This document shows, one piece after another, positions 1 to 47,687 of a DNA stretch of 64,000 nucleotides (the first letter of the stretch is position 1; each line of letters starts with the position of its first letter). Under the pieces are notes generated by a model, which did not search any database, was not told where the DNA came from, and saw only the letters and a program-made list of their open reading frames with translations. The DNA is from Amphiscolops sp. MND2022. Its lineage: Eukaryota. The translations under genes were made by a program, and so were the position numbers. Location of the stretch: positions 48,980,001 to 49,044,000 of the forward strand of contig OZ076421.1 of assembly GCA_964187785.1 (NCBI GenBank), written 5' to 3'.

Positions 1-3000
1 CACAGTGTCGTGGTTAGTGTTTTTGCAGCTTTTTGCCACCGGATGGCGGCTATTTTCGTCTGAGGCGACTAAAATAAAAAGGGACGAGTTCAGGTGTTTA
101 CTATTCGGATTTCCTGTGAGATCAATTTGAATTTCCTCTACAGGGTTTCTGAACGGTTCGATTTTTGATTTTTTGATACTAGGGATTTGTGAGTTTAAAT
201 TTTTACTGGCTTTTGGACAGGTGGAGTAGGTTTTTGCCTTTTGCTATATGTCAGACTTCATGTGAGGCTACCAGAATATCACTGCGTCACTGCATATTTT
301 TTTGACCCCGGAATGGCGGCAGTGTAGGGCGTTTAGTGCAGAGTATCGCCAACTTTTGGCGACGATGAATTGGTCGTCAACCATAGTTATACCCCAGCGC
401 GGTGTGTCAGTCCCTTTGCCACCTGTTTATAGTCTTCGGGGATCAGCTGCATGTTGTTGTCTTCCAAACAGCATTGTAATTCAACTAGGTGTAGATCCGC
501 TGCTGTTTCTTTAGTCACGGGTTCCAAATAGAACATAAAATTGATCGAATGTCGTCTTTTTGTTGTCGGTTTCGGGCTGGTTTTTTCTCTATCAAAAGTA
601 GTGGACGGCTATTTCTTCAATCGACCCGTCACGATACTCTTACACAGGGATACCTGGGTGGACTTCAAGTTCTTCCGTAGTAAACGTCTCCTCTGGTGAT
701 GATTATGCCGTCGATTTGGTGTCTCGTGTCGATTTTTGTTTTGTTATTATCTCCGGATTGGCTTTGGTAGTTGGTGTTGTTCGCGGTGGGATTTCGTCGC
801 CAAAATCTGTGAAGGAGCTGCCTCCGACACGTTCAAGGCCCCAAATCACGCGTAATAAGTCGACGGAAGATTTCTTTTTGGCGTCGTTGAAGCGGCTGGC
901 AAAAGCAATGGGATTGTGAGTTTAAATTTTTACTGGCTTTTGGACAGGTGGAGTAGGTTTTTGCCTTGGTGATATCCCGAGCAAGCATGCTGTTTCCCTA
1001 TGGTAGATTCTTGATTTCTTTTTGCTAGCTCTGTAGTCTTCGTTTTCAAGTTTTGTAGGACTGATTCTAGTTTGTTAGTGTGTTGTTCCTTTGTTCCGCG
1101 TTTACGACTATTATGTCGTCTAACGCTTTTGGTGTTTGGTGGCCTAGTGTCTGGGCAATTTTCTCTTGGAAGAAAGTCAGTATGTCGCCTGTTCCGTAGA
1201 AGCCCGTATCCGTTAATTTTTTCTCCCGTGATTGCAAACTGGCTGGTTGATTGCAAATTGGCTGGTTGATTGCAACTGCTTTCCGGTGCAAGTTTCATCC
1301 GTCCGTAGACGTGGTGTAAGTCTGTGACGGATATTCAAATCGAATCTGGGTTGTTTTTTTACAGTTCGCATGAGATTTGGTTAAGTAGTTTATCCATTTT
1401 GGGTTTTGTCGTCTTTTTACACAGTTATTGTTCAGTTTTCGGGCATCTGATGCGATTTTGACCGATTTGTTTTTTTTCGAGGGCTACAAAGCAGACTTCT
1501 TCGACTGTTTCCCAATTTTCTAGATGGATGTCCGGATTTTATTAGTCGGCCAACTTTGTTCACGTCATCTTGTCGATGGTATGGAATTGGTCGTGCTTGT
1601 TCTTGTATTGGGAAGCTTCCCGAATTTATTTGTATTTGAATTTCAACGTTTTTGATGACGTGGTTTGTTTTAAACAGGTTTTTGAATTTTGTGTACATTG
1701 TTTCTGTTAGGTTGGTTTCTTTGTCCGGTGAGATTTTGTTGATGGTAAATGGTAAATGTTTCGGCCATTATACTCTCGGAAGGGGTGTTATATCGTCTCG
1801 TTTTGTAATTAGTAGTGGCAATTCCGTTTTTGTGTTGTTGTAATCTACATTTAACTAAATCTTTCCCAGGAGTTTGGTTTCGTTTTTGTCCACAACTCAG
1901 TATTTTTCCTTCATCAATTGGATGTTGTTCGTCTTGCATATTGTTGGATTTTTTGGCATGATGGTGATCGGGCAGTCAAGGTCCTTGGTGAATTTTTGCT
2001 TTTTCCGTTTCTTTTCACTTTGATACCTTGGTGATCGTTGTTGTCCGGCCTTTTTATTATTTGTGTTATTTGGCTGATTTCTTCGAGTTCGCTTTCTTCT
2101 TCATCATCCTCCGAAGTCATGTTTTCCAGATAATTAATTGTTCTTGTGTTGTTGTTTGCTTTTCAGCGGCACACCTGTGCGAAGTGTCCTATTTTCTGGC
2201 AGTTGTTGCATTTTACTGTTTTCGCCGGGGAGTCATGTTGGGGTGTCCATTTGTGTTGTCCGCTGAATCCGCAATCATTTTTCTTTTCTGTTCCCCGTTG
2301 TTCTCGGTGCTGCCTTATTTGGATTTTTCGGATTGATTCTTGTTTTATCTCTTCATCCTTTGCCAATGTGGGTGCTATTTTAGATTGTTTTCGTCGACGG
2401 TCGTGGCTGTTTTTGGGAAATGAAAACTACAGTTGCTTTCAAATTTAGGGTTTTTTCACGGATTAGTTTTTCCCCGAGTTTCTTGTCGGTAAAATTTGTA
2501 ATGTATTTCGATCAAAATAGATCTTCTTGTTTCATGCTTTTAAAGTTGTTTTTTTTTCATCGGTTAATAGTTTTGCCAGTTTTCTTCGAGGGTCTCGTTG
2601 TCTTCTTGTTTCGCCCAAACGCAATCTCCACAGCTGTGATAGGTGTTTGATTTTGGCATGTACTATTCAATGAATGACTGTATCAGTTTGTCAGTTTTAA
2701 TGGTATCTGGGTCCATATTAAATTCTCCTTTGGTGAATATTTCGTTGCCGAAAGTGCCGCGCCCCAGATAAAATCTTGTCCGATCTCTGGTTCTTTCGTA
2801 TCCCAGGGATTGCGGGTTGGTGTCATGTCATCTACTAATATTTGCTTGACATCAACTTTGTAGATTCTCTTTATGTAATGCTGAAATCTTTCTTTCCATT
2901 TCTTGGGTGTGTACAAATTTTTCCCGTTGAGTCCGATGTCTTCCCGATACGATAGTCGTATATTTGTTGTAGCTGTAATCGGTTGTTGGTTCATGTCTAA

Positions 3001-4765: not shown

Positions 4766-5001
4766 TGTGACATCAGGCCAATACTATGACCTCCACAATC
4801 GCCGTAGCATACGGATCAAGACAGAGAGACTATTATTGTTTACCAACATAGAACTCTAAATGCTGTCAAAATGCTGTGTTGTACCATAGATATTGCCCAT
4901 TATACTTGATCAGATACTGAAATTTAGTTGATAAAGAAGAAGAAACAGTTTATTCTTCTAGAATAAAGACCGTTTTTACCGTATTCACCGAGATTATCAC
5001 A
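4766..5001 (+). repeat. 5' LTR, family A
   Basis: TGTGACA...TATCACA termini and AATAAA, followed directly by PBS TGGCGCAGT (5002-5010; resembles tRNA-Ser-type PBSs). The left boundary is inferred from the terminal inverted repeat only. Confidence 0.75.
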
Positions 5002-5062
5002 TGGCGCAGTAGCAAGATTTATTTTTACCGTAAAAACCCAATTTTAACCGATCAAACTATCG

Positions 5063-6160
5063 ATGGCGACAACCAAGAATAATATAGTGCTACCGTACCT
5101 TGAAGACACCGGACTCGACGGTAAAAAACTATATACCCCTAAAGAATGGACCGAACGATTACGACACTACATACATCGAATTTACAATATCGATATAAAA
5201 CCGGCTTTATCCGGGGAAACGATACAAACAAATATTGAAAGGACGACAAAAGAACCCGAGATAAGACAAGATTTCATCAGGGGAGCAGGACCTTCAGCAA
5301 TAGAAACCATTACCAAAGGAGAATTAAACACAGATCTCAATACCATCAATACAGAAAAACTCATCAAACTATTCAAAGATTAGTACTTGCCAAAACGAAA
5401 CACCTACCACAGCCGAGGCGATTTCTTCTGGGCAAAACAAGAAAAAATGAGACACCGGAAGAACACTGGCGAAAACTAGTATCCCTAGAAAAGAACTGCG
5501 AATTCAAAGACATCAAACAAGGAGATCTAATAATATCAAATTTCATTACCAGCATAACTGATACTAAGGGCAAAACTCAATAGTGAAAAGACACTAAATC
5601 TGAAAACCACAATGGATCTAGTAACCCAAGACAGCTACGAAAGAAGACATAAACAATCATCAACAATACCACCAGCACTTGCGAAAGAAAAAGAAATAGA
5701 AGAACCGATACAAAAAATACAACCGCGGATCAAACAAAACTACTGGAAAAATGCCGAAACAGCAACGAAGAACAATAACTGTGGATTTTGCAGACAGCAA
5801 AACTGATCACCATCACAAAAATGCCCGGCTAGAACGGTAGAATGTAACAACTGCCACAAAATGGGACACTTCGCGAGAGTGTACCGCAGCGAAACCGATG
5901 GTACAAAAAAACAAAAAACATTACTATTTCGAAGAGACATATAACGAAGAGGAAGAAAGTGAACCGGAAGAAATACAACAAATCACGCGAATCAACAGGG
6001 TACTACCACACGAAATTGACAATTACGGGATCAAACTAAACATCAACGGCGAATATCTAAACCTGACCATCGATACCGGTTCTCCGGTTACAATAAAGCC
6101 AAACAACCCGGAACTCTACGACCAAAAAGATATCAAAACATTAAAAGAAAGATATTCAAG
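5063..6160 (+). pseudogene. gag (two CCHC-type knuckles) and aspartic protease, disrupted
   Basis: [20 protein letters not shown] double-knuckle remnant at ~5780-5885. LTIDTGSPVTI protease motif in ORF 5898-6173. Stops and frameshifts. Confidence 0.85.
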
Positions 6161-6169
6161 ATGTGTACA

Positions 6170-6905
6170 CTAGAGCCGCATATGCGGTAAAGGAGTCGGC
6201 TTAGGTTTTTTCTTCTGACTCGCCCCAATCCCAGTCATAACAATTTACTGGATTTGCACACATAGGACAATACTATGGTGTAGAAAATGACTGTAAAAAT
6301 TTCCCTTCGAATCGTATGAACAGTTTTAGCAAAAGTCAAAAAAAGTCGAAAAAAGCCGGTTTTTTGGCCATTTTTGGGTTAATTTAGGCTATGTTTCTCA
6401 CATCCCAGCAATATGAAATTGTTGAAATTACACACAAAGGACCGTAACATGGTGTAGAATGACTGTACAAAATTTCATTTGATTCGTATGGACAGTTTTT
6501 GAGAAAATAGAAACAAATCGAAAAATGAGTGTTTTTTGGCCATTTTTGGGCTAATTTTGGCTATGTTTCTCACATCCCAGCCATACGATTTTGATTCCAT
6601 TGCACACATAAGACTCTAAAATGCTGTAAAATAACTGTAGAAAATTTCGTTCGAATCGTATGGACAGTTTTTGAGAAAATCGAAAAAAAGTCGAAAAATC
6701 GCTATTTTTTGGCCATTTTTGTCTAATTTTGGCTATGTTTCTTACATCCCAACCATACGATTTTGATGCCTTTGCGCACGCTGGGGCCCCTTCGGGTGTA
6801 GAATGACTGTGCAAAATTTCGTGAAAATCGTATTGACAGGGAGAAAAAAAACAAAAAAAAACAGCACGATTGCATAAGTAGTCGGAAATTTTTTCCGACT
6901 TCTAA
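6170..6905 (-). mobile_element. Non-autonomous Helitron2/Helentron-type element (family S) carrying ~172-bp satellite monomers
   Basis: Interrupts pol inside an A-run with no TSD. Minus strand: TT-AGAAGTCGG plus 5' hairpin (plus 6879-6903), monomers, then CCGACTCCT (plus 6191-6199), hairpin CCGCATATGCGG (6176-6187) and CTAG (6170-6173). Confidence 0.75.
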
Positions 6906-9900
6906 AAAACGAAATTAAATTCGTCAGGTAAACTTGGGTCGATATCGAATACAACGGGAAAACAACAAAATTGCCAATCTTGATCCCAAAAAGAAGCGAC
7001 ATCACACCATTACTAGGTGTGATCTGGATGAAGCAATTACCAATCACCATTAACAAAATCCAATTGGACGAACCTATCAACCAATCGGAAGCCATCCACA
7101 CGAAATTCGGCAAGCTATTTGAAACAAACCATACAATCAAAAACATAGAAGTGAAATTTCCAACAAAACCAGGGTGTTACGCAATTCAATAAAAAGACAG
7201 ACCGATACCGTATCACTTACAAAAAGACGTAAAGAACGAACTGGACCAATTAATAAAATCCGGACATCTCGAACGACTAAAAACAGTCGAAGAAAATTGT
7301 TTCGTATCACCCGTGGTAATTAGGGTAAAAAAAGACAAAACCGTGAAAATCGCACTGGATGCCCGGAAACTCAATGACAGCTGTGTGAAGAAAAAAACAC
7401 ACATGCCAAATATGGAAGAATTACTGAACCAAATATCTGCCGACTTATCCTAGAATGACAGCGACCCAATCTGGATATCCGTAATAGAGAACAGGCGAAA
7501 CCAGAGCCGCATATGTGGTAAAGGAATCGGTTTAAGTCTTTTTCCTTCTGACTCGCTTCCGTTCGAATCGTATGAATAGTTTGTGAGAAAATCAAAAAAA
7601 TCGAAAAATGACTGTTTTTTTGGCCTTTTTTGGGCTAAATTTGGCTATGTTTCTCACTTCCCAGCCATACGAATTTAATGAAATTGCACATAAAGGACCA
7701 TAATATGGTGTAGAATTACTGTAGAAAATTTCGTTCGAATCGTAAGGACAGTTTTTGAGAAAATCGAAAAAAATCGAAAAATGACTGTTTTTTGGCCATT
7801 TCTGGGCTAATTTTGGCTATGTTTCTTACATCCCAGCCATACGATTTTGATGTCATTGCACATATAGGACTCTAATATGGTGTAGAATAAGTGTAGAAAA
7901 TTTTGTTCGAATCTTTTGGACAGTTTTTGAGAAAATAGAAAACCAGAGCCGCATATGCGGTAAAGGAGTCGGCTTAAGTCTTTTTCCTTCCGACTCGCTT
8001 TCGTTCGAACCGTATGAACAGTTTGTGAGAAAATTGAAAAAATCGAAAAAAGACTGTTTTTTTGGCCATTTTTGGGCTAAATTTGGCTATGTTTCTCACT
8101 TCCCAGCCATACGAATTTAATGAAATTGCACATAAAGGACCATAATATAGTTTAGAATGACTGTAGAAAATTTCGTTTCGAATCGTAAAGACAGTTTTTG
8201 AGAAAATCGAAAAAAATCGGAAAATGATTGTTTTTTGGCTATTTTTGGGCTAACTTTGGCTATGTTTCTTACATCCCAGCCTCACGATTTTGATGTCATT
8301 GCACATATAGGACTCTAATATGGTGTAGAATAAGTGTAGAAAATTTTGTTCGAATCTTTTGGACAGTTTTGGAGAAAATAGAAAACCAGAGCCGCATATG
8401 CGGTAAAGGAGTCGGCTTAAGTCTTTTTCCTTCCGACTCGCTTTCGTTCGAACCGTATGAACAGTTTGTGAGAAAATTGAAAAAATCGAAAAAAGACTGT
8501 TTTTTTGGCCATTTTTGGGCTAAATTTGGCTATGTTTCTCACTTCCCAGCCATACGAATTTAATGAAATTGCACATAAAGGACCATAATATGGTTTAGAA
8601 TGACTGTAGAAAATTTCGTTCGAATCGTAAGGACAGTTTTTGAGAAAATCGAAAAAAAATCGAAAAATGACTGTTTTTTGGCCATTTATGGGCTAATTTT
8701 GGCTATGTTTCTCACATCCCAGACATACAATTTTGATGCCATTGCACATATAGGACTCTAATATGGTGTAGAAAAACTGTAGAAAATTTCGTTCGAATCG
8801 TATGGACAGTTTTTGAGAAAATCGAAAAAAGTCAAAAAATGGCTGTTTTTTGGCCATTTTTGGGCTAATTTTGGCTATGTTTCTCACATCCCAGCCATAT
8901 GATTTTGATGTCATTGCACATATAGGACTCTAATATGGTGTAGAATAACTGTAGAAAATTTCGTTCGAATCGTATGGACAGTTTTTGAGAAAATAGAAAA
9001 CCACAGCAGCATATGCGGTAAAGGAGTCGGCTTAAGTCTTTTTCCTTCTGACTCGCTTTCGTTCGAACCGTATGAACAGTTTGTGAGAAAATCGAAAAAA
9101 TTGAAAAAGACTGTTTTTTTGGCCATTTTTGGGCTAAATTTGGCTATGTTTCTCACTTCCCAGCCATACGAATTTAATGAAATTGCACATAAAGGACCAT
9201 AATATTGTTTGAAAAGACTGTAGAAAATTTCGTTCGAATCGTATGGTCAGTTTTTGAGAAAATCGAAAAAAGTCGAAAAATGACTGTTTTTGGCCCTTTT
9301 TGGGCTAATTTTGGCTATGTTTCTCACATCCCAGCCATACGATATTAATGCCATTGCACATATAGGACTCTCATTTGGTGTAGAATAACTGTAGAAAATT
9401 TCGTTTGAATCGTATGGACAGTTCTTGAGAAAATCGAAAAAAGTCGAAAAGTGGCTGTTGTTTTGCCACTTTCGGGCTATTTTTGGCTACGTTTCTCACA
9501 TCCCAGCTATACGATTTTGATGCCTTTGCACACGCAGGGGCCCCTTTGGGTGTAGAATGACTGTGCAAAATTTCGTGAAAATCGTATGGACAGTTTTTGA
9601 GAAATTTGAAATTTTCATGAAAAGGTCGGGAGAAAAAAACAAAAAAAACAGCACGATTGCATAAGTAGTCGAAAATTTTTTCCGACTCCTAAAAATTGAA
9701 AAATGAGTGTTTTTGGGCCGTTTTTGAGCTAATTTTGGCTATGTTTCTCACATCCCAGCCATACGATTTTGGTTCCATTGCACATATAAGACTCTAAAAG
9801 GCTGTAGAATAACTGTAGAAAATTTCGTTCGAATCGTATGGACAGTTTTTGAGAAAATCAAAAAAAGTCAAAAAATCGCTGTTTTTGGCCATTTTTGGGC

Positions 9901-12790
9901 TTATTTTGGCTATGTTTCTCACATCCCAGCCATACTGTTTTGATACCATTGCACAAATAGGACTCTATTATGATGTAGAACGACTGTAGAAAAATTCGTT
10001 TGAATCGTATGGACAGTTTTTGAGAAAATTGAAAAAAGTCGGAAAATCGCTGTTTTTTGGCCATTTTTTGGCTAATTTTGGCTATGTTTTTCACATCCCA
10101 GTCAGACGATTTTTATGCCTTTGCACACGCAGGAGCCCCTTTGGGTGTAGATTGACTGTGCAAAAGTTCGTGAAAGTCGTATGGACAGTTTTTGAGAAAT
10201 TTGAAATTTTCATGAGAAGGTCGGGAGAACAAAACAGCACGATTGCATAAGTAGTCGAAAAATTTTTCCGACTCCTAAAAATCAACAGTTATTTCCGATT
10301 CTTGAAAAAATTTTTTGGCCCTGCCGATATACCAACGATTTTCCAAGAGAAAATAGACAGAACACTGGGCCACCAAACATCGGTTTGGTTGGACGACATT
10401 ACAGTTGTCACACGCGGAACAAAAGAAGAACACACCCGAAAACTATATTCGGTACTTACAAAACTAGAAAACGAGGGATACAGAGCAAGGAAGAAAAAAA
10501 ATCAAAATTCTACCAAAAAGAAACAATTTAGTTCAAACATACAATATCGCGAGACGGAATCAGACCAAACAAAGAAAAAACCGATGCGATAAAGAAATTA
10601 GAACCACCAACGAACTCCAAAACACTAAAGTCCTTTCTTGGAGCCATACAATTTTTTTGCAAAATTTATACCGAACCAGTCCGAGAAAATAGACAACATG
10701 AGAGAATTACTCAAGAAAGGGACAAAATGGAAATGGACCACTGACCGAAATTCAGACTTCCACAAAATAAAGCAAGAAATATCAACACTACCCTGCCTAG
10801 TACGTTACAACGGTAACAAGGACAACATCGTTACTACAGATGCGTGCAAAACCGGCTTAGGAGTAGCACTATGGCAAAAGCAAGGTAGCGGAGAGTTGAA
10901 ACAAATAGCCTTTATTAGCCGCTACTTAAACGTCGCCGAAAAGAAATATTCCATCGGAGAGTTAGAAATATTAGCCGTTGTTTGGGGCTTGGAAAGATTC
11001 CGATTTCACCTATACGGTAAACAAGTTCAACTATTCTCGGACCATCAAGCATTAGAACCCCTTCTAAAACGAAACAAGATGAATAAACAATTCAGTGCAT
11101 GGCTAACACAATGACTGGACAGATTGAATCACTTTGACATCTGCTTAAAACACACTGCCGGCAAAAAAATTGTATCCACGGACTTCATTACCCGAAACCC
11201 TACCGAAAATCCAGAACCGGAAAAAAACAACGAAGAGGAATTTGTTATTAACGCCATCGCGCAGCTAGCAACAGCAAACGCCCGAATATGACGGATTTTC
11301 AACCAATCAAACGGCGCGGATACGGCCAATGAAGCAAACATGCAGAATACGCGCTCGTTAATTGATACGCGACGCTATCAAACAAACAAAAACCATATTG
11401 ATTCAAATTACCGCATACAACAGTACTCATCCGAAAAACGACTCATCTGACAATGCATGTTTCTTTCGAATCGACGGACAATTACGCCACCAATGGGGTG
11501 CAGATGAAGATAATATGGCCATCGTAAACAAAAGAGACAAATCACCCGAAACTGCAGAGCTAGTGAGAAGGAGAGTGGAATTGGCGAGACCAGGCGCAAT
11601 GAGACCACACTGGAACAAAAACTTGGGCCGGGAAATCTACATAACAAGAAGACCCGAAGAAGATGAAAGACAAGAAATTGAACGAATTGACTTTCAACTA
11701 AAGAGAAAAATTAGAGAGTCTCACATTGGCGGAGGATGTTTCCAAAATTTCGGAGACGAAAGACCGCAAGGGCAAACCACAGAACAGCAACAACAGACTG
11801 AAAGAAATGAACCACCCGAGAACAAGAAACCAACAGGGACACAGAATCCACCATCTCTAACAACTCCGAAGAAGCGGTAGCGACACATGAACCCGGGACA
11901 TACCCAGCAATACCGGTTCAACAATACAGAGACGGACCAATCGAAGAAATCGCAATACACTATGTGAGAATCAACCGCGTAGTTGAAGAAAAAGCAAAAC
12001 GAAATAAACAACAGGCAGACAATGTCAGATCAGCAGAATTGGATTTCATGCTAGACTTGGACACAATAATTAAAGAAACGGCCGACGATCCTGATCTCAT
12101 TGAGCTGAACTGCTGTATCGAAGACATTAAAACGGAACAAATTCCGCACAACTAAAGAACCGTAGCCAAAAAAAACCCACCGCTGGGGCATCATAATGGT
12201 TGACGACCGCATTGTGGTACAAAAGCCACTACGATGCGCAGCCCTAACTGCATTACATTTCGGTCACCCCAGAATTTAAAAAATGTGCAGCGACGCAGCG
12301 ATATTCTGACGGCCGAAAAAGCGGAAGGCATTGAGAGGAAATCAAAAACCTGCACAGCCTGCCTCAACGCTGGTAAGAAATTAAAATTTCAAATACCACA
12401 AACCGAAAAATCAACAGATGAACCGCCAAAAACACCGAGCGAAGAACTTTAAAAAGATTTCACCGGAAACAACAGAAAACTATCAACTAATCCGCTCATT
12501 TTAATTGCGGTCAACAAGCACAGTCGTTGGCCAGTAGCAAAAATATGCAAAAATACAAACCACGAAACCGTAACCTCATTTTTGAATGAATACATAAAGG
12601 TATACGGAATACCGAAACAAATAAAATCGGATAAATGCCGCGCCTTTATCTCCAAAGAAGACAAAAAAATTTGTAAATCACAATGTATATAACGCGTATA
12701 CGGAACAGCTAATCTACATACCGGCAACGGATTAGTCGAACGAACTATCTAATCACTAAAGAATCGGATACTGGCGAACTTAGAAGACGA
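6906..12790 (+). pseudogene. pol block 1 (RT, RNase H, long linker, integrase N-half), interrupted at 7501-10278
   Basis: LDARKLND; PTIFQEKIDRTLGHQTSVWLDD; TTDACKTGLG..YSIGELEILAVVWGLERF (ORF 10638-11114); integrase HH/CC remnants at ~12230-12370. Confidence 0.9.
7501..10278 (-). repeat. Family S satellite array: ~172-bp monomers in a ~443-bp higher-order repeat, with nested element ends
   Basis: The GGCTATGTTT marker recurs at spacings of 172, 270, 173, 270, 173, 172, 269, 171, 172, 252, 171 and 172 bp. The 3' module starts at ~7501, 7942, 8385 and 9001. The 5' module ends at 9690 and 10276. Confidence 0.95.
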
Positions 12791-15700
12791 CCAATTGGAA
12801 GCCATTCACACGAATTTCAGCAAGCTATTTGAAACAAACCATACAATCAAAAATATAGAAGTGAAAATTCAAACAAAACCAGGATGTTACGCAATTCAAC
12901 AAAAAGACAGACCGATACCGTATCATTCACAAAAAGACGTAAAAAACGAACTGGACCAATTAATAAAATCCGGACATCTCGAACGACTAGAAAGAGTCGA
13001 AGAAGATTGTTTCGTATCACCCGTAGTAATCACGGTGAAAAAAGACAAAACAATGAAATCGCACTGGATGCTCGAAAACTCAATGACAGCTGTGTGAAGA
13101 GAAGAACACACATGCCAAATACGGAAGAATTACTGAACCAAATATCTGCCGAATTATCCAAGAATGACCGCAACCCAATCTGGATATCCGTAATAGATCT
13201 CGACTATGCATACCGACAGATGAAACTGGCACCCGAAACCAGTAAACATTGTAACTTCGCGATAACAGGTGAAAAAATCAACAGTTATTTCCGATTCCTA
13301 AAAAGGTTTTTTGGCCCTGCCGATATACCAACGATTTTCCAAGAGAAAATGGACATAACACTGTGCCACCAAACATCGATTTGATTGGACGACAGTATAG
13401 TTGTCACACGCGGAACAAAAGAAGAACACACCCGAAAATTATATTCAGTACTTACAAAACTAGAAAACGAGGGACACAGAGCAAGGAAGAAAAAATCAAA
13501 ATTCTCCCAAAAAGAAACCATATAGCTTAGACATACAGTATCGCAAGACGGACTCAGACCAAACAAAGAAAAAACCGATGCGATAAAGAAATTAGAACCA
13601 CCAACGAACTCCAAAACACTAAAGTCCTTTCTTGGAGCCATACAGTTTTTTTTGCAAAATTTATACCAAACCTGTCCGAGAAAACAGACAACATGAGACA
13701 ATTACTCATGAAAGGGACAAAATGGAAAAACCACTGACCGAAATTCAGACTTCCACAAAATAAAGCAAGAATTATCAACACTACCCTGCCTGGCACATTA
13801 CAACGGTAACAAGGACAACATCGTTATTGCAGATGCGTGCAAAACCGGTTTAGGAGTAGCACTATGGCGAAAACAAGGTAGCGGAGAATTAAAACCAAAA
13901 GCTTTTGCCAGACGCTACTTAAACGGCGCCGAAAACAATAATTCCATGGGAGAGTTGGAATAATTAGCCGTTGTTTGGGGCTTGGAAAGATTCCGATTTC
14001 ACCTATACGGTAAACAAGTTCAACTATTCTCGGACCATCAAGCATTAGAACCCCTTCTAAAACGAAACAAGATGAACAAACAATTCAGTGCATGGCTAAC
14101 ACAATGACTGGACAGATTGAATCACTTTGACATCTGCCTAAAAAACACTGCCGGCAAAGAAATTAAATTCACGGACTTCATTACCCGAAACCCTACTAAA
14201 AATCCAGAACCGGAAGAAAACTACGAAGAGGAATTTGTTATTAACGCCATCACGAAGCAAGCAACGGCAAACGCCCGAATAGGACGGATTTTCAACCAAT
14301 CAAACGGCGCGGATACGGCCAATGAAGCAAACATTCAGGATACGCGCACGCTAATTGATATGCGACGCTACCAAACAAACAAAAACCATATGGATTCAAA
14401 TTACCGCATACAGTACTCATACAATAACAGTACTCATCCGAAAACGACCTTTCAAAAATTAATAACAACGAGAACAATGCACGTTTCTTCCGAACCGACG
14501 GACAATTACGCCACCACTGGGGTGCAGATGACGATATTATGGCCATCGTAAACAAAAGAGACAAATCACCCGAAACTGCGGAGCTAGTGAGAAGGAGAGT
14601 GGAATTGGCGAGAACAGACGCAATGAGGCCACACTGAAATAAAAACCTGGGCCGGGAAATCTACATAACAAAAAGACCCGACGAAGATGAAAGAAGAGAA
14701 ATTAAACAAATTGACATTCAACTAAGGAGAAAAATTAGAGAGTCTCACACTGGGGGAGATATTTCCAAAATTTCGGAGACGAAATACCGCAAAGACAAAC
14801 CACAGAACAGCAACAACAAACTGACAGAAATGAACCGCCCGAGAACAAGAAACCAACAGGGACACAGAATCCACCACCTCTAACAACTCCGAAGAAGCGG
14901 TAGCGACACATGAACCCGGGACATACCCAGCAATACTGGTTCAACAATACAGAGACGGACCATTCGAAGAAATCGCAGTACACTATGTGAGAAACAACCG
15001 CGAAGTTGAAGAAAAAGCAAAACGAATTACAACAAGACAACAATGTCAGGTAGGTAGAATTGGATTTCAGGCTAGACTTGGAAACAATAATTAAAGAAAC
15101 GGCCGCCGACCCTGATCTCATCGAGTTGAACTGCTGTATCGAAGACAATAACACGGAACAAATTTCGCACAACAGAACCATAATCAAAAAATTAACCCAT
15201 CGCTGGGGCATCATAATGATTGAAGACCGCATTGTGGTACCAAAGTCACTACAATACGCAGCCCTAAGTGCTTTACATTTCGGTCATCCCGGAATTATCA
15301 AAATGTGCAGCGACGCAGCGGTATTCTGGTGGCCGAACATGCGACAAGACATTGCGAGGAAATCAAAAACCTGATCAGCCTGTCTCAACGCTCTTAAGAA
15401 TTTAAAATTTCAAATACCACAAACCGAAAAATCAAAAATTGAACCGCCAAAAACACCGGGCGAAGAAATCCAAATATATTTCACTGGAAATTTGCACAAC
15501 AAAAAACTATCACCCAATCCGCCCGTAATAATTGCGGTCGACAAGAACAGTTGATAGCCAGTAGCAAAAATATGCAAAAATACAAACCACAAAATCGTAA
15601 TTTCATTTTCGAACGAAAACATAAATGATAAATGTATACGGAGTACCGAAACAAATAAAATCGGATGAAGGCGGCGCCTTTATCTCTAGAGAAAACAAAA

Positions 15701-36000: not shown

Positions 36001-38117
36001 CTGTGTCCCATATTTAGGGGGCTAGTGCTCAAGGTTGGAGAGCCATATTTCTGCCGAAAATTTGGTCACTGAAGAATCAGTGTCGTTCTGTATTCGAACG
36101 TCATGAACGTCATGACCATTTACCTTGATGCTATGAAATTCAGCTTTCCTTCCATCGTGGTGGACCTCTTCTTAAGTGGCGATTTGTTCTGCGTAAAACA
36201 TGCTTTTTTCGGATGAAGAGGGATCTTCGAATTTTTTTCCTTCACAAGTATGGTACACTGGTGCATTTGATTTTCGATAGATTTTCCCCTCAATTCGCGA
36301 GACTTCTTGTCTTTTAACTCTGCACATTCTGGAGTAGTGTCCTTGTTCGAACAATTGTGAAGTTTTTCATCCTTTTCAGGGCACTCATAAAGTGGGTGGA
36401 AAGGTTTTCGTTCAAATCGTCAACACTGTTCTGGACTCTGACGGCGACTCAGATATTTTTAGTCGGCGTTTTTCTAGTGAAAAGAACCTGACTATTACTG
36501 TTTTTTTATGTTTTTGTCAGACTACAATCCTCACTCTGATTGGTCCACTTTTCTTACAACAGAAACTACTAAAACTACTAAGGCATAAAACAAATCGTGT
36601 TAGAGGAAATTTTGTGAAAAGGGTCCCCCTTTCATTTTTTTAACTTTTTTGGGGCAATTTATAAAACCGGACGTGCCTAAAGGGTCCCCTCATTGGATTT
36701 CGTGTGGCACTGTGCGTCCTTTTTTCGAAAATTTTAAAAAGTCCCCAAGGGGTTCCTTTTTCTGTGTTTACTTTTTCAACGTAATCAACAAACTTCAATT
36801 TTTTTCCAAGACTTTGGGACATTTTCCCAATATTTACAAATTTCTCCAAAGGTTCCCTTCATTTTTTTGGTTTTATGCAACTGAATGGATGTTGAAAAAG
36901 CCCAAGGGGTCCCTCTTCTACAATTTTTGGCATAATGGAATTTTTCTGAATGATATATTTTTGTCCTCAAATTTTTTTTTCAGTTTTTAAAAACTTTGCG
37001 CTTTTTGAGCCTGATATGTAGCGCCGACTGTAGACGTTCCCGTCTTTTCTATGATCAGTGCCACGTTTTTCCGCATATGCAGCCACACTTGAAGTTGACT
37101 CTTGAACTGAGCTCTAAGCAAACCTCTTGGCCTGGGCTCTATACTGAATGAGCTGAAGCAGTTCCTTCACAGTCAAGTTGTTGTTTGCTCTGAGTGCCTC
37201 AAATAGAATGAGTTGGCTTCGCTGTCTCACAGTCCGGGGATGAATTGTAATCGATCAATTCTGCTTCAGGATCCAGAGAAACTTTGAGATCGATCCACAT
37301 ACTTGCAATACTCTCAGCCTCTCGTATCCTAGCAAGGTAGTCGGTTTCTGCTTCTTTTCCCCCATGGGACATCTGAAGGAAGCCAGCGGTTTCTGCAGTC
37401 ACCAGTTGCCTCTTGTTTTCAAGACCTTCCTCAAGTTCGGGTAAGAGTGTAGGCATACACATAGAGATCTGAGTTCGAGATCGCTGGGTTGATTTAAGCC
37501 TTTGTGTTTCTCGAAGAACACTTCACAGCCCTGCTCTGACTTGCTCAAAATATCTGTCGTGGATGATTAGGCAGTCGAACGTTCTCAGGTCTTCAAAGGT
37601 ATTTGGGGACCCAGTAAGTTGACAATAAACTATGCCGCATACGTTAGTAAGACCTCTCAATGAAGCCACCAACTGAGTTACACTTTGAGGTTGATAGTTG
37701 TAACTTTTGTGGGGTGTGATAGTATTGTTAATCAGATCGTGCCACGATCTCTGTTTCGTAATTTTAAAATCTTCAGACTTTCGATAGTTGTAAACGTCCC
37801 TTGACTTGGTCACAGACTCTGGGTCCAGACTAAAACCGGGACCGGCTTGGACGAGTTCTCGTTGTTGCTTACGCAAACTGATTTGAAGATCTTCAAATGA
37901 GTTGTACAAAGATATGGCAGCAATAATTTTAAGCATGCTAAATTGAAGTTCATCTTTTTCTAGAAAACCAATTTTCGTGTTTCCTGCAGGTTAAAACACT
38001 TTTCTATAAAAACTGATATTCACTAGACGACATATACCAAAGGGACATCGACTTATTGAAAAAACATACATCAAAAACAGCAATATATAATAAAGACATA
38101 AATCAGTATATATATCT
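33034..38117 (-). mobile_element. Ty3/Gypsy LTR retrotransposon (family B) inserted into the CRE family E element; decayed
   Basis: Diverged direct repeats at ~33034-33141 and ~37974-38117 (TCGTGTTTCCTGCAGG...TAATAAAGACAT...TATATATATC). Minus-strand PPT AAGGGGAGA at ~33142-33150. gag 37050-37950, knuckle at ~36320-36360, RT (LPQGMQNAS) 35135-35467, RNase H (TTDASVKAIGGILSQ) 34528-34911, integrase 33600-34350. Confidence 0.85.
36456..37048 (+). mobile_element. Complete family R Helitron2-type element inserted in gag
   Basis: TTTTT-AGTCGGCG (36461-36468) ... CGCCGACT (37022-37029), then hairpin AGACG-TTCC-CGTCT (37032-37045) and TTT. Internal ~60-bp GGGTCCCC minisatellite. Confidence 0.8.
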
Positions 38118-44234: not shown

Positions 44235-45258
44235 ACATTGAGGCATGGCCATATGGCACGTCGCTCTGCTTCGCTTCGCTCCTGCATTCAGGGCACTAGG
44301 GGTATGTGAACATATCTGACTACGTTATAAAAATTTCGATCCGAGTTGTTTCGATCCCATTCAAAAATTTGGTATTGTCGACCTGAGGACTAACTCTGAT
44401 TTTCGATCCCGTTCCTTCGACCTATTTCCACCCAAATTATGGTAGCAGAATTAAAAGAAACAAATCAGAAGTAGCTGGAGATCAAGAAGGAGATTGGAAT
44501 TTGCAAACAGAACAAGCGCCCCGAAGAAAGCGCATCAGAGAAAATATAGAGTGATCAGAACAAAGCCAGAGTACCTCTTTGGACACTAAAATGCCCACAG
44601 TAGGCAGTAAAAGAAACCATTATCATTAGGCGAACTTTACTACTTGTAAATCTGCATTTAATGCCCGTTTTGGTTCAACTAGAATTATATCTCTTTGCTC
44701 TGTAATCGTAACCATTTCACGTGCCTCATTGAGTTTCTGAATTGAGATTTGTCCTGGGTCCATTGAACTCTCCTTTTCATCATCTCGTTTCCTTTTTTTA
44801 TGTTTCCTCTGTTGGGTGGGTTTTTTTGTCTGCCGCCCGGGCTGGGGGCACATGACGAATAAAGAATTCGTTGATTGATGACGACAATTCATATCTCTGA
44901 TACTTTTATCAACAATTAGGCTTATTTATTGTTTTCTAAATGAAATAATCTCACCTGGTTTTGTTTGTTCTTCCACACGTTCTTTCTTGCACCAAGAGTG
45001 CTGGTCGCTTCTCACGTCATGCTACTCTCAATTCTCTCACTACTACTACTACTACTCATAAAGGAGACGTTGGGATCTCTCGACTGGCGGGCGGGAATAA
45101 CGTCTAAGGAATAACGTCTAATATGAAAACGGGAATAACGTCTGAATTTAAATCATTTTTCGGGAACAACGTCTAAAGTTTAAGACGTTATTCCCGTTTT
45201 TTTAGACGTTATTCCCGTTTTTTTAGACGTTATTCCCGTCATTTAGACGTTATTCCTG

Positions 45259-45546
45259 TTTTTGCACATGACGAAGTCAATGTGCATTGCAGTCCAGCTA
45301 AGAAAGTTTTTTTTCCACAATAGTCAACTTCATAATGAGCGCCTTTTAGACAAAAGTCAAAACCCCTGAGAGATTCGAACCTGCAGCCTCCCGATTGCAC
45401 GGCATAAGTGTTGACCACTGTGCCATAGGAACGTTATTGAACAAAGTTGAACTGTTGAATATATACGCATGCGATTAAAATAATATATATACGCATATTA
45501 AAATAATGTCTTCGTCATGTGTTGCGAAGCACCGCTTCGCCTATGT
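45259..45546 (+). mobile_element. Short Helitron2-type element (family T) containing a tRNA-like segment
   Basis: T-run, then CACATGACGAAG (45265-45276) within the 5' hairpin GCACATGAC-GAA-GTCAATGTGC. CTTCGTCATGTG (45510-45521), then hairpin GCGAAGC-ACC-GCTTCGC (45524-45540) and CTATGT. Confidence 0.7.
45364..45429 (-). promoter_or_regulatory. tRNA-derived Pol III A/B-box segment
   Basis: Minus strand: TGGCACAGTGG (A-box) ... GGTTCGAATC (B-box) at tRNA-like spacing. Acceptor stem is poor, so not called a tRNA. Confidence 0.55.
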
Positions 45547-45703
45547 GTAAAAACTGAACTCTGGAAGTAAAAATATTAATTTCTGAATGTTTTCACACAA
45601 ACTGACCAGCACAAAAATGGGTCGTGGCAAGGGTATTATTGTCTTTGGTACCCTCAATTCGAACAACAATTCAGAATATTTAATACTTACATACCACATA
45701 CCT

Positions 45704-45889
45704 AATGTGGGGAATATTCGGTGTATGCACGCTCGCCCTCACCGTCGCAAAGACCAGCTCCCACTACGATCGCTTCGCGATGTCCGTTCCCGCTAGGTCT
45801 TTGCTCCTGTTCGACCTCGCTTAGCAAGATGGAACATAAGCGGCCCCAAGGGGCCGCAGGGCACTAGAGGGAATGGAGACATATCCGAG
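45704..45889 (+). repeat. Family H2 copy
   Basis: Inverted copy of 43905-44091. Contains hairpin GCGGCCCC-AA-GGGGCCGC followed by AGGGCACTAG. Confidence 0.85.
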
Positions 45890-47687
45890 ACATGTTTTAT
45901 ACTTTGAATCACTTTATAGCATCAGATCTTGATTGACCTGAATTTTCCCAATTTTAGACGTTCTTCCCGTTTCCTAGACGTATTTAAATTATTTTTGGAT
46001 ATTTTAGGCGTTTTTCCCGATTTTAAACGTTATTCCTGTTTTTCAGACGTATTCTGACGATTTTTTGTTTTTAAACGTTTTTCTGTAATTTTTTAGACGT
46101 TATTCCCGTTTTTCAGACGTATTTTGACAATTTTTCTGTATTTTAAACGTTTTTCTGTAAATAAGACGTTATTCCCGTCTTCAGGTTTAGACGTTATTCC
46201 TCTTTTTAGACGTTATTCCTCTGTTTAGACGTTATTCCCGTTTTTTAGACGTTATTTCTCTGTTTAGACGTTATTCCCGTTTTTTTAGACGTTTTTCCCT
46301 AATATTTCAGTTTAGATGTTATTCCTTTAGACGTTATTCCCGGTGGACCTTTAGACGTTATTCCTTAGACGTTATTCCCTCCTCTACTCTCGACTTCCCT
46401 TCAATGCTCGAACCGCGTGGACTGTACCGAACTGATGGCAAACGCCCAGACGGTGTTACCATGATTCCTTGATAAATGGGTAAACAGCTGATGTGGGATT
46501 TCACGGTTGTGGATGCTCTTGCACCCAGTCGCCTGAATCAAGGCTCTTTATGCCACCCGGGAACCACCGCTACCGAGGATGAAGCGCGTAAAATTGAGAA
46601 GTATCGCGAATTAATAGACAATGGATACATTTTTCAGCCCGTGGCCTTGGAAGTACAGGGCTCTTTAGGCGAGAGCAGTGAAATTTTCATCACGCGTCTC
46701 TGTAAAATGCTGTGTCGTTCGCACGACGATCAACGAGCTGGCAGCTTTTTGAAGCAACGGATTTCAATGGCTCTTCAGATCGGCAATGCGGCCTGTGTTC
46801 TAGGAACTGTGAGCGACAAAGATGCGTTCGAAGAAATTTGTTACATATAGCCTAATTTTTTTGACCTTTTCATCATAGCAGCTTTAGAAAAAATAGTGGC
46901 TGGTTTGAGTAGTTTGTTGGTTGTTTTTTTTTGTTACTGTTCTACTGGTATGGGGTTCCCTACTTTCGTTGCAGACCACGGGTGTGTGTCTTCTCCCCCC
47001 AACATGATGATACACATGGCACTTGATCGATGACGAAGATCCATGATATCTGATAGAACGAAAAAAAAACTTCCAGCCTAGCCTCGTCAGATGTCAAACG
47101 GTCGTCTCAAATCTTTCCAATCGCTGTTGCTTTTTAACAAGCCCATCACAGCAATTAAACTGTCGAATACTAATCAATAGTTGCACAATTTCCGGTATAT
47201 TAATTTCACTTTGTTCATTGACAAATGGTCGATTCTATATTTTCAGGCGATGATTGTTGTTCTTGGCTGATGGATGACATTGAAAGATTCTGCGAAATTA
47301 CTGGTTAGTATTTTTCGAACTGAAAATAAATGTAATTTTTTCAAATGGCCAGCTTTTTTATTTATCTCGCGCCTGGCAACGTTACTGGCTGATGTTTCTG
47401 GGTCACCAGTGTCAAACTTTGGAATTCACTCCGCGACAAAAACAAGCGGTGGCTTCCTTTGATACCTTAAAATCGAAGCTGAAAACTTACCTCTTCTTCA
47501 AGCTTTGTTTTAAAAATAGCATTACATCGTCATCGTGAATGTTCCTAGCGGAAACTATTTTGGACAATGTTGAACTTCAGATTACGGAAGAATAAAAGCG
47601 AAAAGACAACTTAATTTTTTTACTCGAATTGATGCTTACGGAGGTGCCTTTCCTGTAGCCAAGGCCTGGTAGTCAATTTTTGATTAA

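What the first reader, a model, noticed from the sequence alone, without database searches (positions are those of the whole stretch)
6170..10278. The satellite array is cargo of a Helitron2/Helentron-type mobile cassette
Seen: the 172-bp satellite occurs inside discrete cassettes with defined ends. On the minus strand each starts TT-AG(G/A)AGTCGG, which folds back on a nearby CGACT. Each ends CCGACTCCT, then the palindrome CCGCATATGCGG, then CTAG or CTGG, with the 3' inverted repeat 21 nt from the end. Both insertions sit in A-runs of the Gypsy pol gene with no TSD; for the second this can be checked against the empty site at ~13265-13285. Known: a T-start, short asymmetric inverted repeats, two hairpins and TT targets define Helitron2/Helentron elements, whose non-autonomous forms carry satellites in Drosophila and bivalves. 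Inference: this is a rolling-circle satellite-dispersal family in this lineage.
Basis: partly seen in the sequence, partly recalled or inferred. Interest (0 to 1): 0.8.

Follow-up and report, generated by a model that had tools for sequence, protein, structure and literature searches.

The report
Satellite-carrying non-autonomous Helentron-type transposon family
The 172-bp tandem repeat here is the cargo of a short, protein-less rolling-circle-type (Helentron/Helitron2, "HINE") transposon present in about 4,000 copies. This is a clean new example of a way of scattering satellite DNA already described in flies, mites and oysters.

Summary

**Structure (minus strand).** Each element starts with TT, a 9-nt AGGAGTCGG repeat and a fold-back hairpin. 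It carries 0 to about 7 copies of the 172-bp monomer. It ends with the complementary CCGACTCCT, then TTA, the palindrome CCGCATATGCGG, and CTCTGG or CTCTAG.

**Genome-wide counts.**
- The 24-nt 3' module has 4,016 hits; the reversed control has 0.
- The monomer has 10,230 hits, about 2.5 per element.

**Ends and flanks (30 sampled copies).**
- 27 have a recognisable 5' end on the 5' side.
- The five flank positions before AGGAGTCGG are T in 21-27 of 27 copies.
- The first base after the 3' end is T in 29 of 30.

**Empty sites.** Two independent comparisons, one inside the window and five paralogous retrotransposon copies, show insertion into a T-run. There are exactly two extra T and no target-site duplication.

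**Arrays.** About 86% of sampled arrays have at least one strict end module on the expected side.

**The second "cassette" (7501-10278).** It is composite: one element nested in a T-run of another element's monomer, plus a 443-bp higher-order repeat.

**Limits.** No RepHel gene with these ends was found, although intact Helitron-like-element-2 (HLE2) RepHel genes exist in the genome. Rolling-circle movement is therefore inferred, not shown.

The scan noted the same architecture on another piece of this genome (s1-152008). This is a new member of a known kind, of moderate interest.

The parts
6170..6905 (-). Element 1, a complete family-S element of 736 bp with about 3.4 monomers, inserted in an A-run of a decayed LTR-retrotransposon pol
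   Evidence: empty paralogous sites
6170..6199 (-). 3' end module of element 1: CTCTAG end (6170-6175), 12-nt palindrome (6176-6187), TTA spacer, 3' subterminal repeat CCGACTCCT (6191-6199)
6228..6839 (-). 172-bp tandem repeat array of element 1
6876..6905 (-). 5' end of element 1: TT + AGAAGTCGG + loop + CCGACT(A)CT fold-back hairpin
   Evidence: z -3.0
7501..10278 (-). Composite stretch: host element Y with a nested element X and a higher-order repeat of 3' module + monomers
9001..9692 (-). Element X (692 bp, about 3.2 monomers) nested in the T7/A7 run of a monomer of element Y. There are 4 A on the left, 5 A on the right, and 2 belong to X, so no duplication
7501..9000 (-). Three units of [3' module + 2.2-3.2 monomers], 442, 443 and 615 bp long, each starting at the same junction with the monomer T-run. 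TRF reports period 443, 3 copies, 94% matches
10207..10278 (-). 5' flank module of element Y: TT (10277-10278), AGGAGTCGG (10268-10276), fold-back hairpin, poly-T tract
   Evidence: (z -3.6)
13270..13281 (+). Empty site in the second retrotransposon copy: G-A6-T. The filled site has A3 + element + A5
10302..11111 (+). Host sequence: decayed LTR-retrotransposon pol (RT and RT-RNaseH pieces)

Best explanation
The stretch holds copies of a high-copy, non-autonomous transposon family, called S here. It has the Helentron/Helitron2 (HLE2) type of architecture, that is, a HINE (Helentron-associated interspersed element) like Drosophila DINE-1 or oyster Cg_HINE.

An element consists of three parts:
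- a roughly 70-110-bp left flank: TT, the 9-nt repeat AGGAGTCGG, a fold-back partner, a conserved 20-mer and a poly-T tract;
- a variable number of 172-bp monomers;
- a roughly 65-bp right flank: CCGACTCCT complementary to the 5' repeat, TTA, the palindrome CCGCATATGCGG, and CTCTGG.

What is shown: the ends are discrete and conserved, flanks differ between copies, insertion is into T-runs with two element-borne T and no duplication, and the 172-bp repeat occurs almost only inside such elements.

What is inferred: a RepHel transposase supplied in trans recognises the hairpin and inverted-repeat ends. It nicks at the T|T boundaries and moves a single strand by rolling-circle (peel-and-paste) transposition, taking the tandem repeat along.

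The monomers and the left flank carry T-runs, which are the family's own target. Elements therefore nest into each other. Unequal exchange between the duplicated 3' modules then makes higher-order repeats such as the 443-bp unit here.
For: - Ends and copy number: 4,016 hits against 0; 2,034 against 7; 2,225 against 0.
- Sharp 3' boundary in 30 of 30 sampled copies, with unrelated flanks.
- A 5' module in 27 of 30 copies, 239-1,184 bp upstream, in steps consistent with whole monomers.
- Flank composition: T at positions -1 to -5 in 21-27 of 27 copies; T at +1 in 29 of 30 and at +2 in 26 of 30; random further out.
- No TSD and two extra T at two independent empty sites.
- One exact head-to-tail junction, CTCTGG|TTAGGAGTCGG, gives the same ends.
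- The 5' hairpin has z -3.0 to -3.6.
- Monomers: 10,230 hits, about 2.5 per element.
- 38 of 44 arrays on the first 17 Mb of contig 1 have at least one strict module on the right side and strand.
- Intact RepHel ORFs with the HLE2 marker DUF6570 exist in the genome: L043 2,303 aa, L047 2,244 aa, L048 2,047 aa (marker from PMC11417382).
- Defining features taken from PMC4067079 and PMC7492417.
Against: - No autonomous partner was found. Eighteen RepHel loci (L001-L012 and L043-L048) lack S-type modules.
- No 5'-to-3' module pair 3-15 kb apart occurs in the first 36 Mb of contig 1.
- None of 75 right-flank variants lies near a Rep match.
- The 3' palindrome is a weak hairpin (4-bp stem). The internal right-flank hairpin is strong only in some copies.
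- The 3' end CTRR-like motif (CTGG/CTAG) is a canonical-Helitron trait.
- No empty allele was seen in the four public runs, so there is no direct sign of recent movement.
- Head-to-tail multimers are not enriched: 1, against 0 tail-to-tail and 1 head-to-head.
Confidence: 0.85

Rival explanations
1. A non-autonomous canonical Helitron (HLE1) with an unusual 5' end, moved by the abundant Helitron1-type RepHel genes (1,320-aa ORFs).
For: The 3' end reads CTGG or CTAG, which fits CTRR, and a palindrome lies 6 nt upstream. Many intact HLE1-like RepHel ORFs match PF14214 at 205 bits.
Against: The 5' end is TT, not TC. The flanks are T|T, not A|T. There are subterminal inverted repeats and a 5' fold-back hairpin, which HLE1 lacks (PMC11417382). 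Loci L001-L012 carry no S-type modules within about 1.5 kb of the Rep domain.
Confidence: 0.06
2. A SINE-like retroposon read on the plus strand: it would end in an A-run and insert into A-rich LINE-endonuclease targets.
For: On the plus strand each copy ends ...CCGACTCCT followed by 5-6 A and sits in an A-run.
Against: Empty sites show only two extra A and no target-site duplication. The A/T run length is nearly fixed across 27 copies. Rfam finds no tRNA, 5S or 7SL-like head. Both ends have conserved hairpins and inverted repeats.
Confidence: 0.03
3. A MITE of a cut-and-paste (DDE) transposon with a 2-bp TT duplication, or a satellite spread by segmental duplication rather than transposition.
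For: DINE-1-like elements were long filed as MITEs (PMC2374699, PMC4067079). Two extra T could be read as a 2-bp duplication. L013 and L014 are one locus duplicated 4.4 kb apart.
Against: The true termini, TTAGGAG... and ...CTCTGG, are not inverted repeats; the 3' repeat is 21 nt inside. At site 1 the 3' flank is TG, so a TT duplication does not fit. Apart from the L013/L014 duplicate, the sampled copies have unrelated flanks.
Confidence: 0.04

Closest known systems
HINEs: DINE-1 of Drosophila and the mite and mosquito HINE families (Thomas et al. 2014, PMC4067079)
   Same: Subterminal inverted repeats, a short inverted repeat 3-22 bp from the 5' repeat, a palindrome at the 3' end, strings of T at the boundaries that belong to the element, TT target, no coding capacity, and central tandem repeats in some families.
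   Different: The repeat is 9 nt (11 of 12 when extended) rather than 13 nt. The left flank has a poly-T tract instead of a 3-8-nt microsatellite. There is no sequence similarity to the published ends. For several published families the Helentron partner is known; here it is not.
Cg_HINE elements of the Pacific oyster carrying Cg170-like satellite repeats (PMC7492417), and bivalve pearl elements
   Same: Short arrays of satellite-like monomers of about 160-170 bp lie between a left flank (5' repeat + fold-back) and a right flank (3' repeat + palindrome). Insertion is T-rich and without duplication. Copies are scattered over the genome. The autonomous partner is also unidentified.
   Different: The sequences are unrelated. 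Here there is one dominant family with two right-flank subfamilies rather than 11 families. No long classical satellite block of the monomer was seen in the part sampled.
Canonical Helitrons (HLE1)
   Same: No target-site duplication, a 3' hairpin shortly before the end, and a CTRR-like last tetranucleotide (CTGG/CTAG).
   Different: The 5' end is TT, not TC. The target is T|T, not A|T. Subterminal inverted repeats and a 5' hairpin are present.

Membership tests
HLE2 non-autonomous element (HINE; Helentron/Helitron2 type) | Short inverted repeats near both ends, with the 3' one subterminal | tested here: met
   5' AGGAGTCGG pairs with 3' CCGACTCCT, which lies 21 nt from the end. The 5' repeat is exact in 21 of 27 copies. 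At 9 nt it is shorter than the 11-18 nt usually quoted (PMC11417382).
HLE2 non-autonomous element (HINE; Helentron/Helitron2 type) | Short inverted repeat close to the 5' repeat (5' hairpin) | tested here: met
   CGACT(A)CT lies 10-11 nt after the repeat. DNA folds give -6.1 to -8.6 kcal/mol, z -3.0 to -3.6.
HLE2 non-autonomous element (HINE; Helentron/Helitron2 type) | Palindrome or stem-loop after the 3' repeat | tested here: met
   CCGCATATGCGG lies 3 nt after the repeat. It is present in 2,034 strict hits. As a hairpin it has only a 4-bp stem.
HLE2 non-autonomous element (HINE; Helentron/Helitron2 type) | Insertion between T and T, T strings at the boundaries, no target-site duplication | tested here: met
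   Two independent empty-site comparisons. Flank statistics on 27 5' ends and 30 3' ends.
HLE2 non-autonomous element (HINE; Helentron/Helitron2 type) | Termini shared with an autonomous RepHel (with or without AP endonuclease) element of the same genome | tested here: inconclusive
   Intact HLE2-type RepHel ORFs exist. None of the 18 loci read, and no Rep match near the listed module coordinates, carries S-type ends. The search covered only part of the genome.
HLE2 non-autonomous element (HINE; Helentron/Helitron2 type) | Movement by rolling-circle transposition | not testable with these tools
   Only architecture is available. Head-to-tail junctions are not enriched. No polymorphic empty allele was seen.
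Canonical Helitron (HLE1) | 5' TC, 3' hairpin + CTRR, insertion between A and T | tested here: not met
   CTRR and the hairpin are met. 5' TC and the A|T target are not.
MITE (cut-and-paste TIR element) | Terminal inverted repeats and a target-site duplication | tested here: not met
   The termini are not inverted repeats of each other, and there is no duplication at the two empty sites.
SINE | Pol III head, A-rich tail of variable length, 5-15-bp duplication | tested here: not met
   No Rfam match. The A count is fixed and there is no duplication.

The most novel reading that the evidence does not exclude
The cargo may feed its own spread. The 172-bp monomer and the left flank contain the T-runs that the family targets, so elements insert into each other far more often than chance. 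In this sample 2 of 30 copies, plus one in the window, are nested, while the family covers only about 0.2% of the genome. Each nesting duplicates a 3' module, and that duplicate can then seed higher-order repeats by unequal exchange. This would be a self-reinforcing route from transposon cargo to satellite. In addition, this family and a second family (R) share an AGTCGG core. They may be served by one lineage-specific HLE2 RepHel clade that carries unusual accessory domains (JAB/MPN, OTU, GIY-YIG).
Probability: 0.3. Interest if true: 0.55.

Novelty: new member of a known kind. Interest (0 to 1): 0.38.

Why it matters
It explains where the 172-bp repeat of this genome comes from and why it is scattered in thousands of short arrays rather than in blocks.

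It gives exact family boundaries for annotation. Such elements are missed by Helitron finders that look for TC...CTRR.

It adds a clean case, with two empty-site proofs, to the small set of lineages in which Helentron-type elements are known to carry and seed satellite DNA.

The nested copy and its 443-bp higher-order repeat show an early step from transposon cargo to satellite. This could be followed across populations.

Tried and rejected
**Search for the autonomous partner**
- I read 12 loci around strong Helitron_like_N matches (L001-L012, 3.5 kb each) and six 10-kb loci for other RepHel families (L043-L048). None has S-type modules.
- A single AGGAGTCGG 9-mer upstream of the L047 ORF is best read as chance. 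The "inverted repeats" around that ORF are copies of the other family, R, in opposite orientations.
- Cross-checking coordinates of module hits against all Rep matches gave nothing within 15 kb.

**Test for rolling-circle multimers**
- Exact head-to-tail junctions: 1. Tail-to-tail: 0. Head-to-head: 1. There is no enrichment.

**Test for insertion polymorphism**
- Contigs of four public runs bridge the filled junctions in both samples. No empty allele was among the joints shown, and most contigs are too short to be informative.

**Other checks**
- Rfam on 6000-10500: no match, so the monomer is not a known RNA gene.
- Motif searches in papers and in the supplements of the DINE-1 and oyster papers: no related sequence.
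- The organism's name was coded, so lineage-specific literature could not be checked.

Full report
**What is there**

Read on the minus strand, the stretch contains elements with one common plan.

- The 5' end is TT, followed by AGGAGTCGG (AGAAGTCGG in element 1).
- After a 10-11-nt A/T loop comes CGACT(A)CT, which folds back on it.
- A conserved 20-mer and a poly-T tract follow.
- Then come copies of a 172-bp monomer.
- The 3' part ends with CCGACTCCT (the complement of the 5' repeat), TTA, the 12-nt palindrome CCGCATATGCGG, and CTCTGG or CTCTAG.

Element 1 occupies 6170-6905.

The second stretch, 7501-10278, is composite. It has four 3' modules, starting at 7501, 7943, 8386 and 9001, and two 5' modules, ending at 9692 and 10278.

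The 5' hairpin folds clearly better than shuffled sequence, z -3.0 to -3.6. The 3' palindrome gives only a 4-bp stem.

**More than chance, and a family**

The window is part of a 1.07-Gb genome.

| Query | Hits | Reversed control |
|---|---|---|
| 24-nt 3' module, up to 2 mismatches | 4,016 | 0 |
| Strict 3' core | 2,034 | 7 |
| Strict 5' core | 2,225 | 0 |
| 24-mer of the monomer | 10,230 | 1 |

The monomer count is about 2.5 per element.

In the 30 loci fetched around exact 3' modules, similarity stops right after the end motif (CTCTGG or a close variant). The flanks are unrelated, except for one local duplicate pair, L013 and L014.

Twenty-seven of the 30 have a recognisable 5' end upstream, and the other three look 5'-truncated. 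Element lengths run from 239 to 1,184 bp, in steps consistent with whole monomers. Two right-flank subfamilies differ in where the array meets the flank.

**Target and duplication**

The second retrotransposon copy in the window has G-A6-T at 13270-13281. The filled site has A3, the element, and A5.

For element 1, five paralogous copies of the same retrotransposon were fetched. Four of the five show a run of five A where the filled site has one A, the element, and six A; the fifth differs by one base.

In both cases exactly two extra A are present, which are two T on the element's strand. Nothing is duplicated.

Across copies:
- The five positions before AGGAGTCGG are T in 26, 27, 21, 24 and 25 of 27 copies. 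The sixth position is random.
- The first two positions after the 3' end are T in 29 and 26 of 30.
- The single exact head-to-tail junction in the genome reads CTCTGG directly followed by TTAGGAGTCGG.

So the element starts with TT and inserts inside T-runs. This is what Thomas et al. describe for Helentrons and their non-autonomous HINEs: a TT target and strings of T that are part of the element (PMC4067079).

**Are the arrays bounded by the modules?**

From the monomer's side, I listed the exact monomer hits on the first 17.2 Mb of contig 1. They fall into 44 arrays. I compared their coordinates with the strict module hits.

- 38 arrays (86%) have at least one module on the expected side and strand.
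- About 19 have both.

The strict patterns detect only about half of the modules (2,034 against 4,016). This result therefore fits nearly all arrays lying inside elements. No long block of the monomer was seen in that region.

**The composite stretch**

Element X (9001-9692) sits inside a monomer of element Y, in its run of seven T. There are four A on the left and five on the right, two of which belong to X. The monomer phase continues across the insertion.

Below X, three units of [3' module + monomers], 615, 443 and 442 bp long, all begin at the same junction. Two of the 3' modules are 100% identical.

The simplest reading is that nesting placed a second 3' module in the array. Unequal exchange between the two modules then multiplied the unit. 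This step is inferred.

In the 30-locus sample, two more elements are nested in other copies of the family. One sits in a monomer T-run (L018) and one in the left-flank poly-T (L030).

**What it is**

Each structural feature used to define HINEs and HLE2 elements is met: inverted repeats with the 3' one subterminal, a 5' fold-back partner, a 3' palindrome after the repeat, T|T insertion without duplication, and central tandem repeats (PMC4067079, PMC7492417, PMC11417382).

- Canonical Helitron features are only partly met. CTRR and a hairpin are present, but not 5' TC or the A|T target.
- MITE and SINE readings fail on the ends and on the empty sites.
- Rfam finds no RNA gene in the monomer.

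**The missing partner**

The genome has more than 150 Helitron_like_N matches. They include intact RepHel ORFs with the HLE2 marker DUF6570:
- L043, 2,303 aa, with a weak JAB/MPN match;
- L047, 2,244 aa, with OTU;
- L048, 2,047 aa.

There is also a family with a C-terminal GIY-YIG domain (L044).

None of the 18 loci read has S-type ends. No Rep match lies near listed module coordinates.

The transposase, and hence the choice between Helentron and Helitron2, stays open. The oyster study reached the same point (PMC7492417).

**Other tests**

Contigs from four public runs of two samples bridge the filled junctions. No empty allele was seen among the joints shown, but most contigs are very short. 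Head-to-tail junctions are not enriched.

**Earlier notes of this scan**

- Another reader noted the higher-order repeat on this same stretch (s1-188656).
- A second family with an AGTCGG core was noted at 36456-37048 (s1-188745).
- The same architecture was noted on another piece of this genome (s1-152008).

I checked the first two on the sequence. They agree with what I see.

**Verdict**

This is a new member of a known kind, and a clean one. Its main open points are the identity of the transposase and direct proof of movement.

Noticed in passing
window 36456-37048 (+): A second non-coding family (R) has the same plan. Its 5' end has T's, TAGTCGGCG and a fold-back hairpin. Its 3' end has CGCCGACT, 3 nt, a GACG-TTCC-CGTC palindrome, then TT. 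It shares the AGTCGG core with family S. Copies also occur in L036, L043 and L047.
   Followed up: partly
L044:1908-9026 (G000:C1:73780734-73790733): An intact 2,372-aa RepHel ORF has a C-terminal GIY-YIG domain (E 2.3e-5). It is one of about 30 copies with ORFs of about 2,370 aa. It is flanked by arrays of hairpin repeats: about eight units upstream (1170-1640) and five downstream (9090-9490). A GIY-YIG in an HLE2 has been reported for a moss family (PMC11417382).
   Followed up: partly
L043:2325-9236 (G000:C1:34706039-34716038): An intact 2,303-aa HLE2 RepHel (DUF6570, Rep, PIF1) has a weak N-terminal JAB/MPN match (21.3 bits, just under the cut-off). About 500 bp after its stop lies a family-R 3' end, followed at once by a 5'-truncated R copy. 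Whether this ORF is R's partner is open.
   Followed up: partly
L036 around 1100-1190, oriented (G000:C1:8069563-8072586): Inside the poly-T of a family-S left flank, a family-R 3' end is followed directly by an R 5' hairpin of about 38 nt. This 3'-to-5' junction could come from read-through of a tandem or circular intermediate.
   Followed up: no
G000:C1:19590823-19594977; C1:30103156-30113820; C12:19485228-19489312; C12:50432669-50434313: Clusters of family-S modules lie at regular spacings of about 1.0-1.75 kb on one strand. This suggests further higher-order tandem arrays built from whole elements. Only coordinates were seen.
   Followed up: no
window 45094-46378: Several arrays of a 14-21-bp unit (TTTAGACGTTATTCC and variants), with periods 19, 21, 39, 58 and 70, were listed by TRF. 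They were not examined.
   Followed up: no
window 1372-2964 (-), 5000-12000 (+) and 12790-15023 (+): Three decayed copies of related LTR-retrotransposon pol sequences lie within 15 kb. Two are 91-92% alike and one is about 67% alike in reverse orientation. The region is a nest of repeats.
   Followed up: partly
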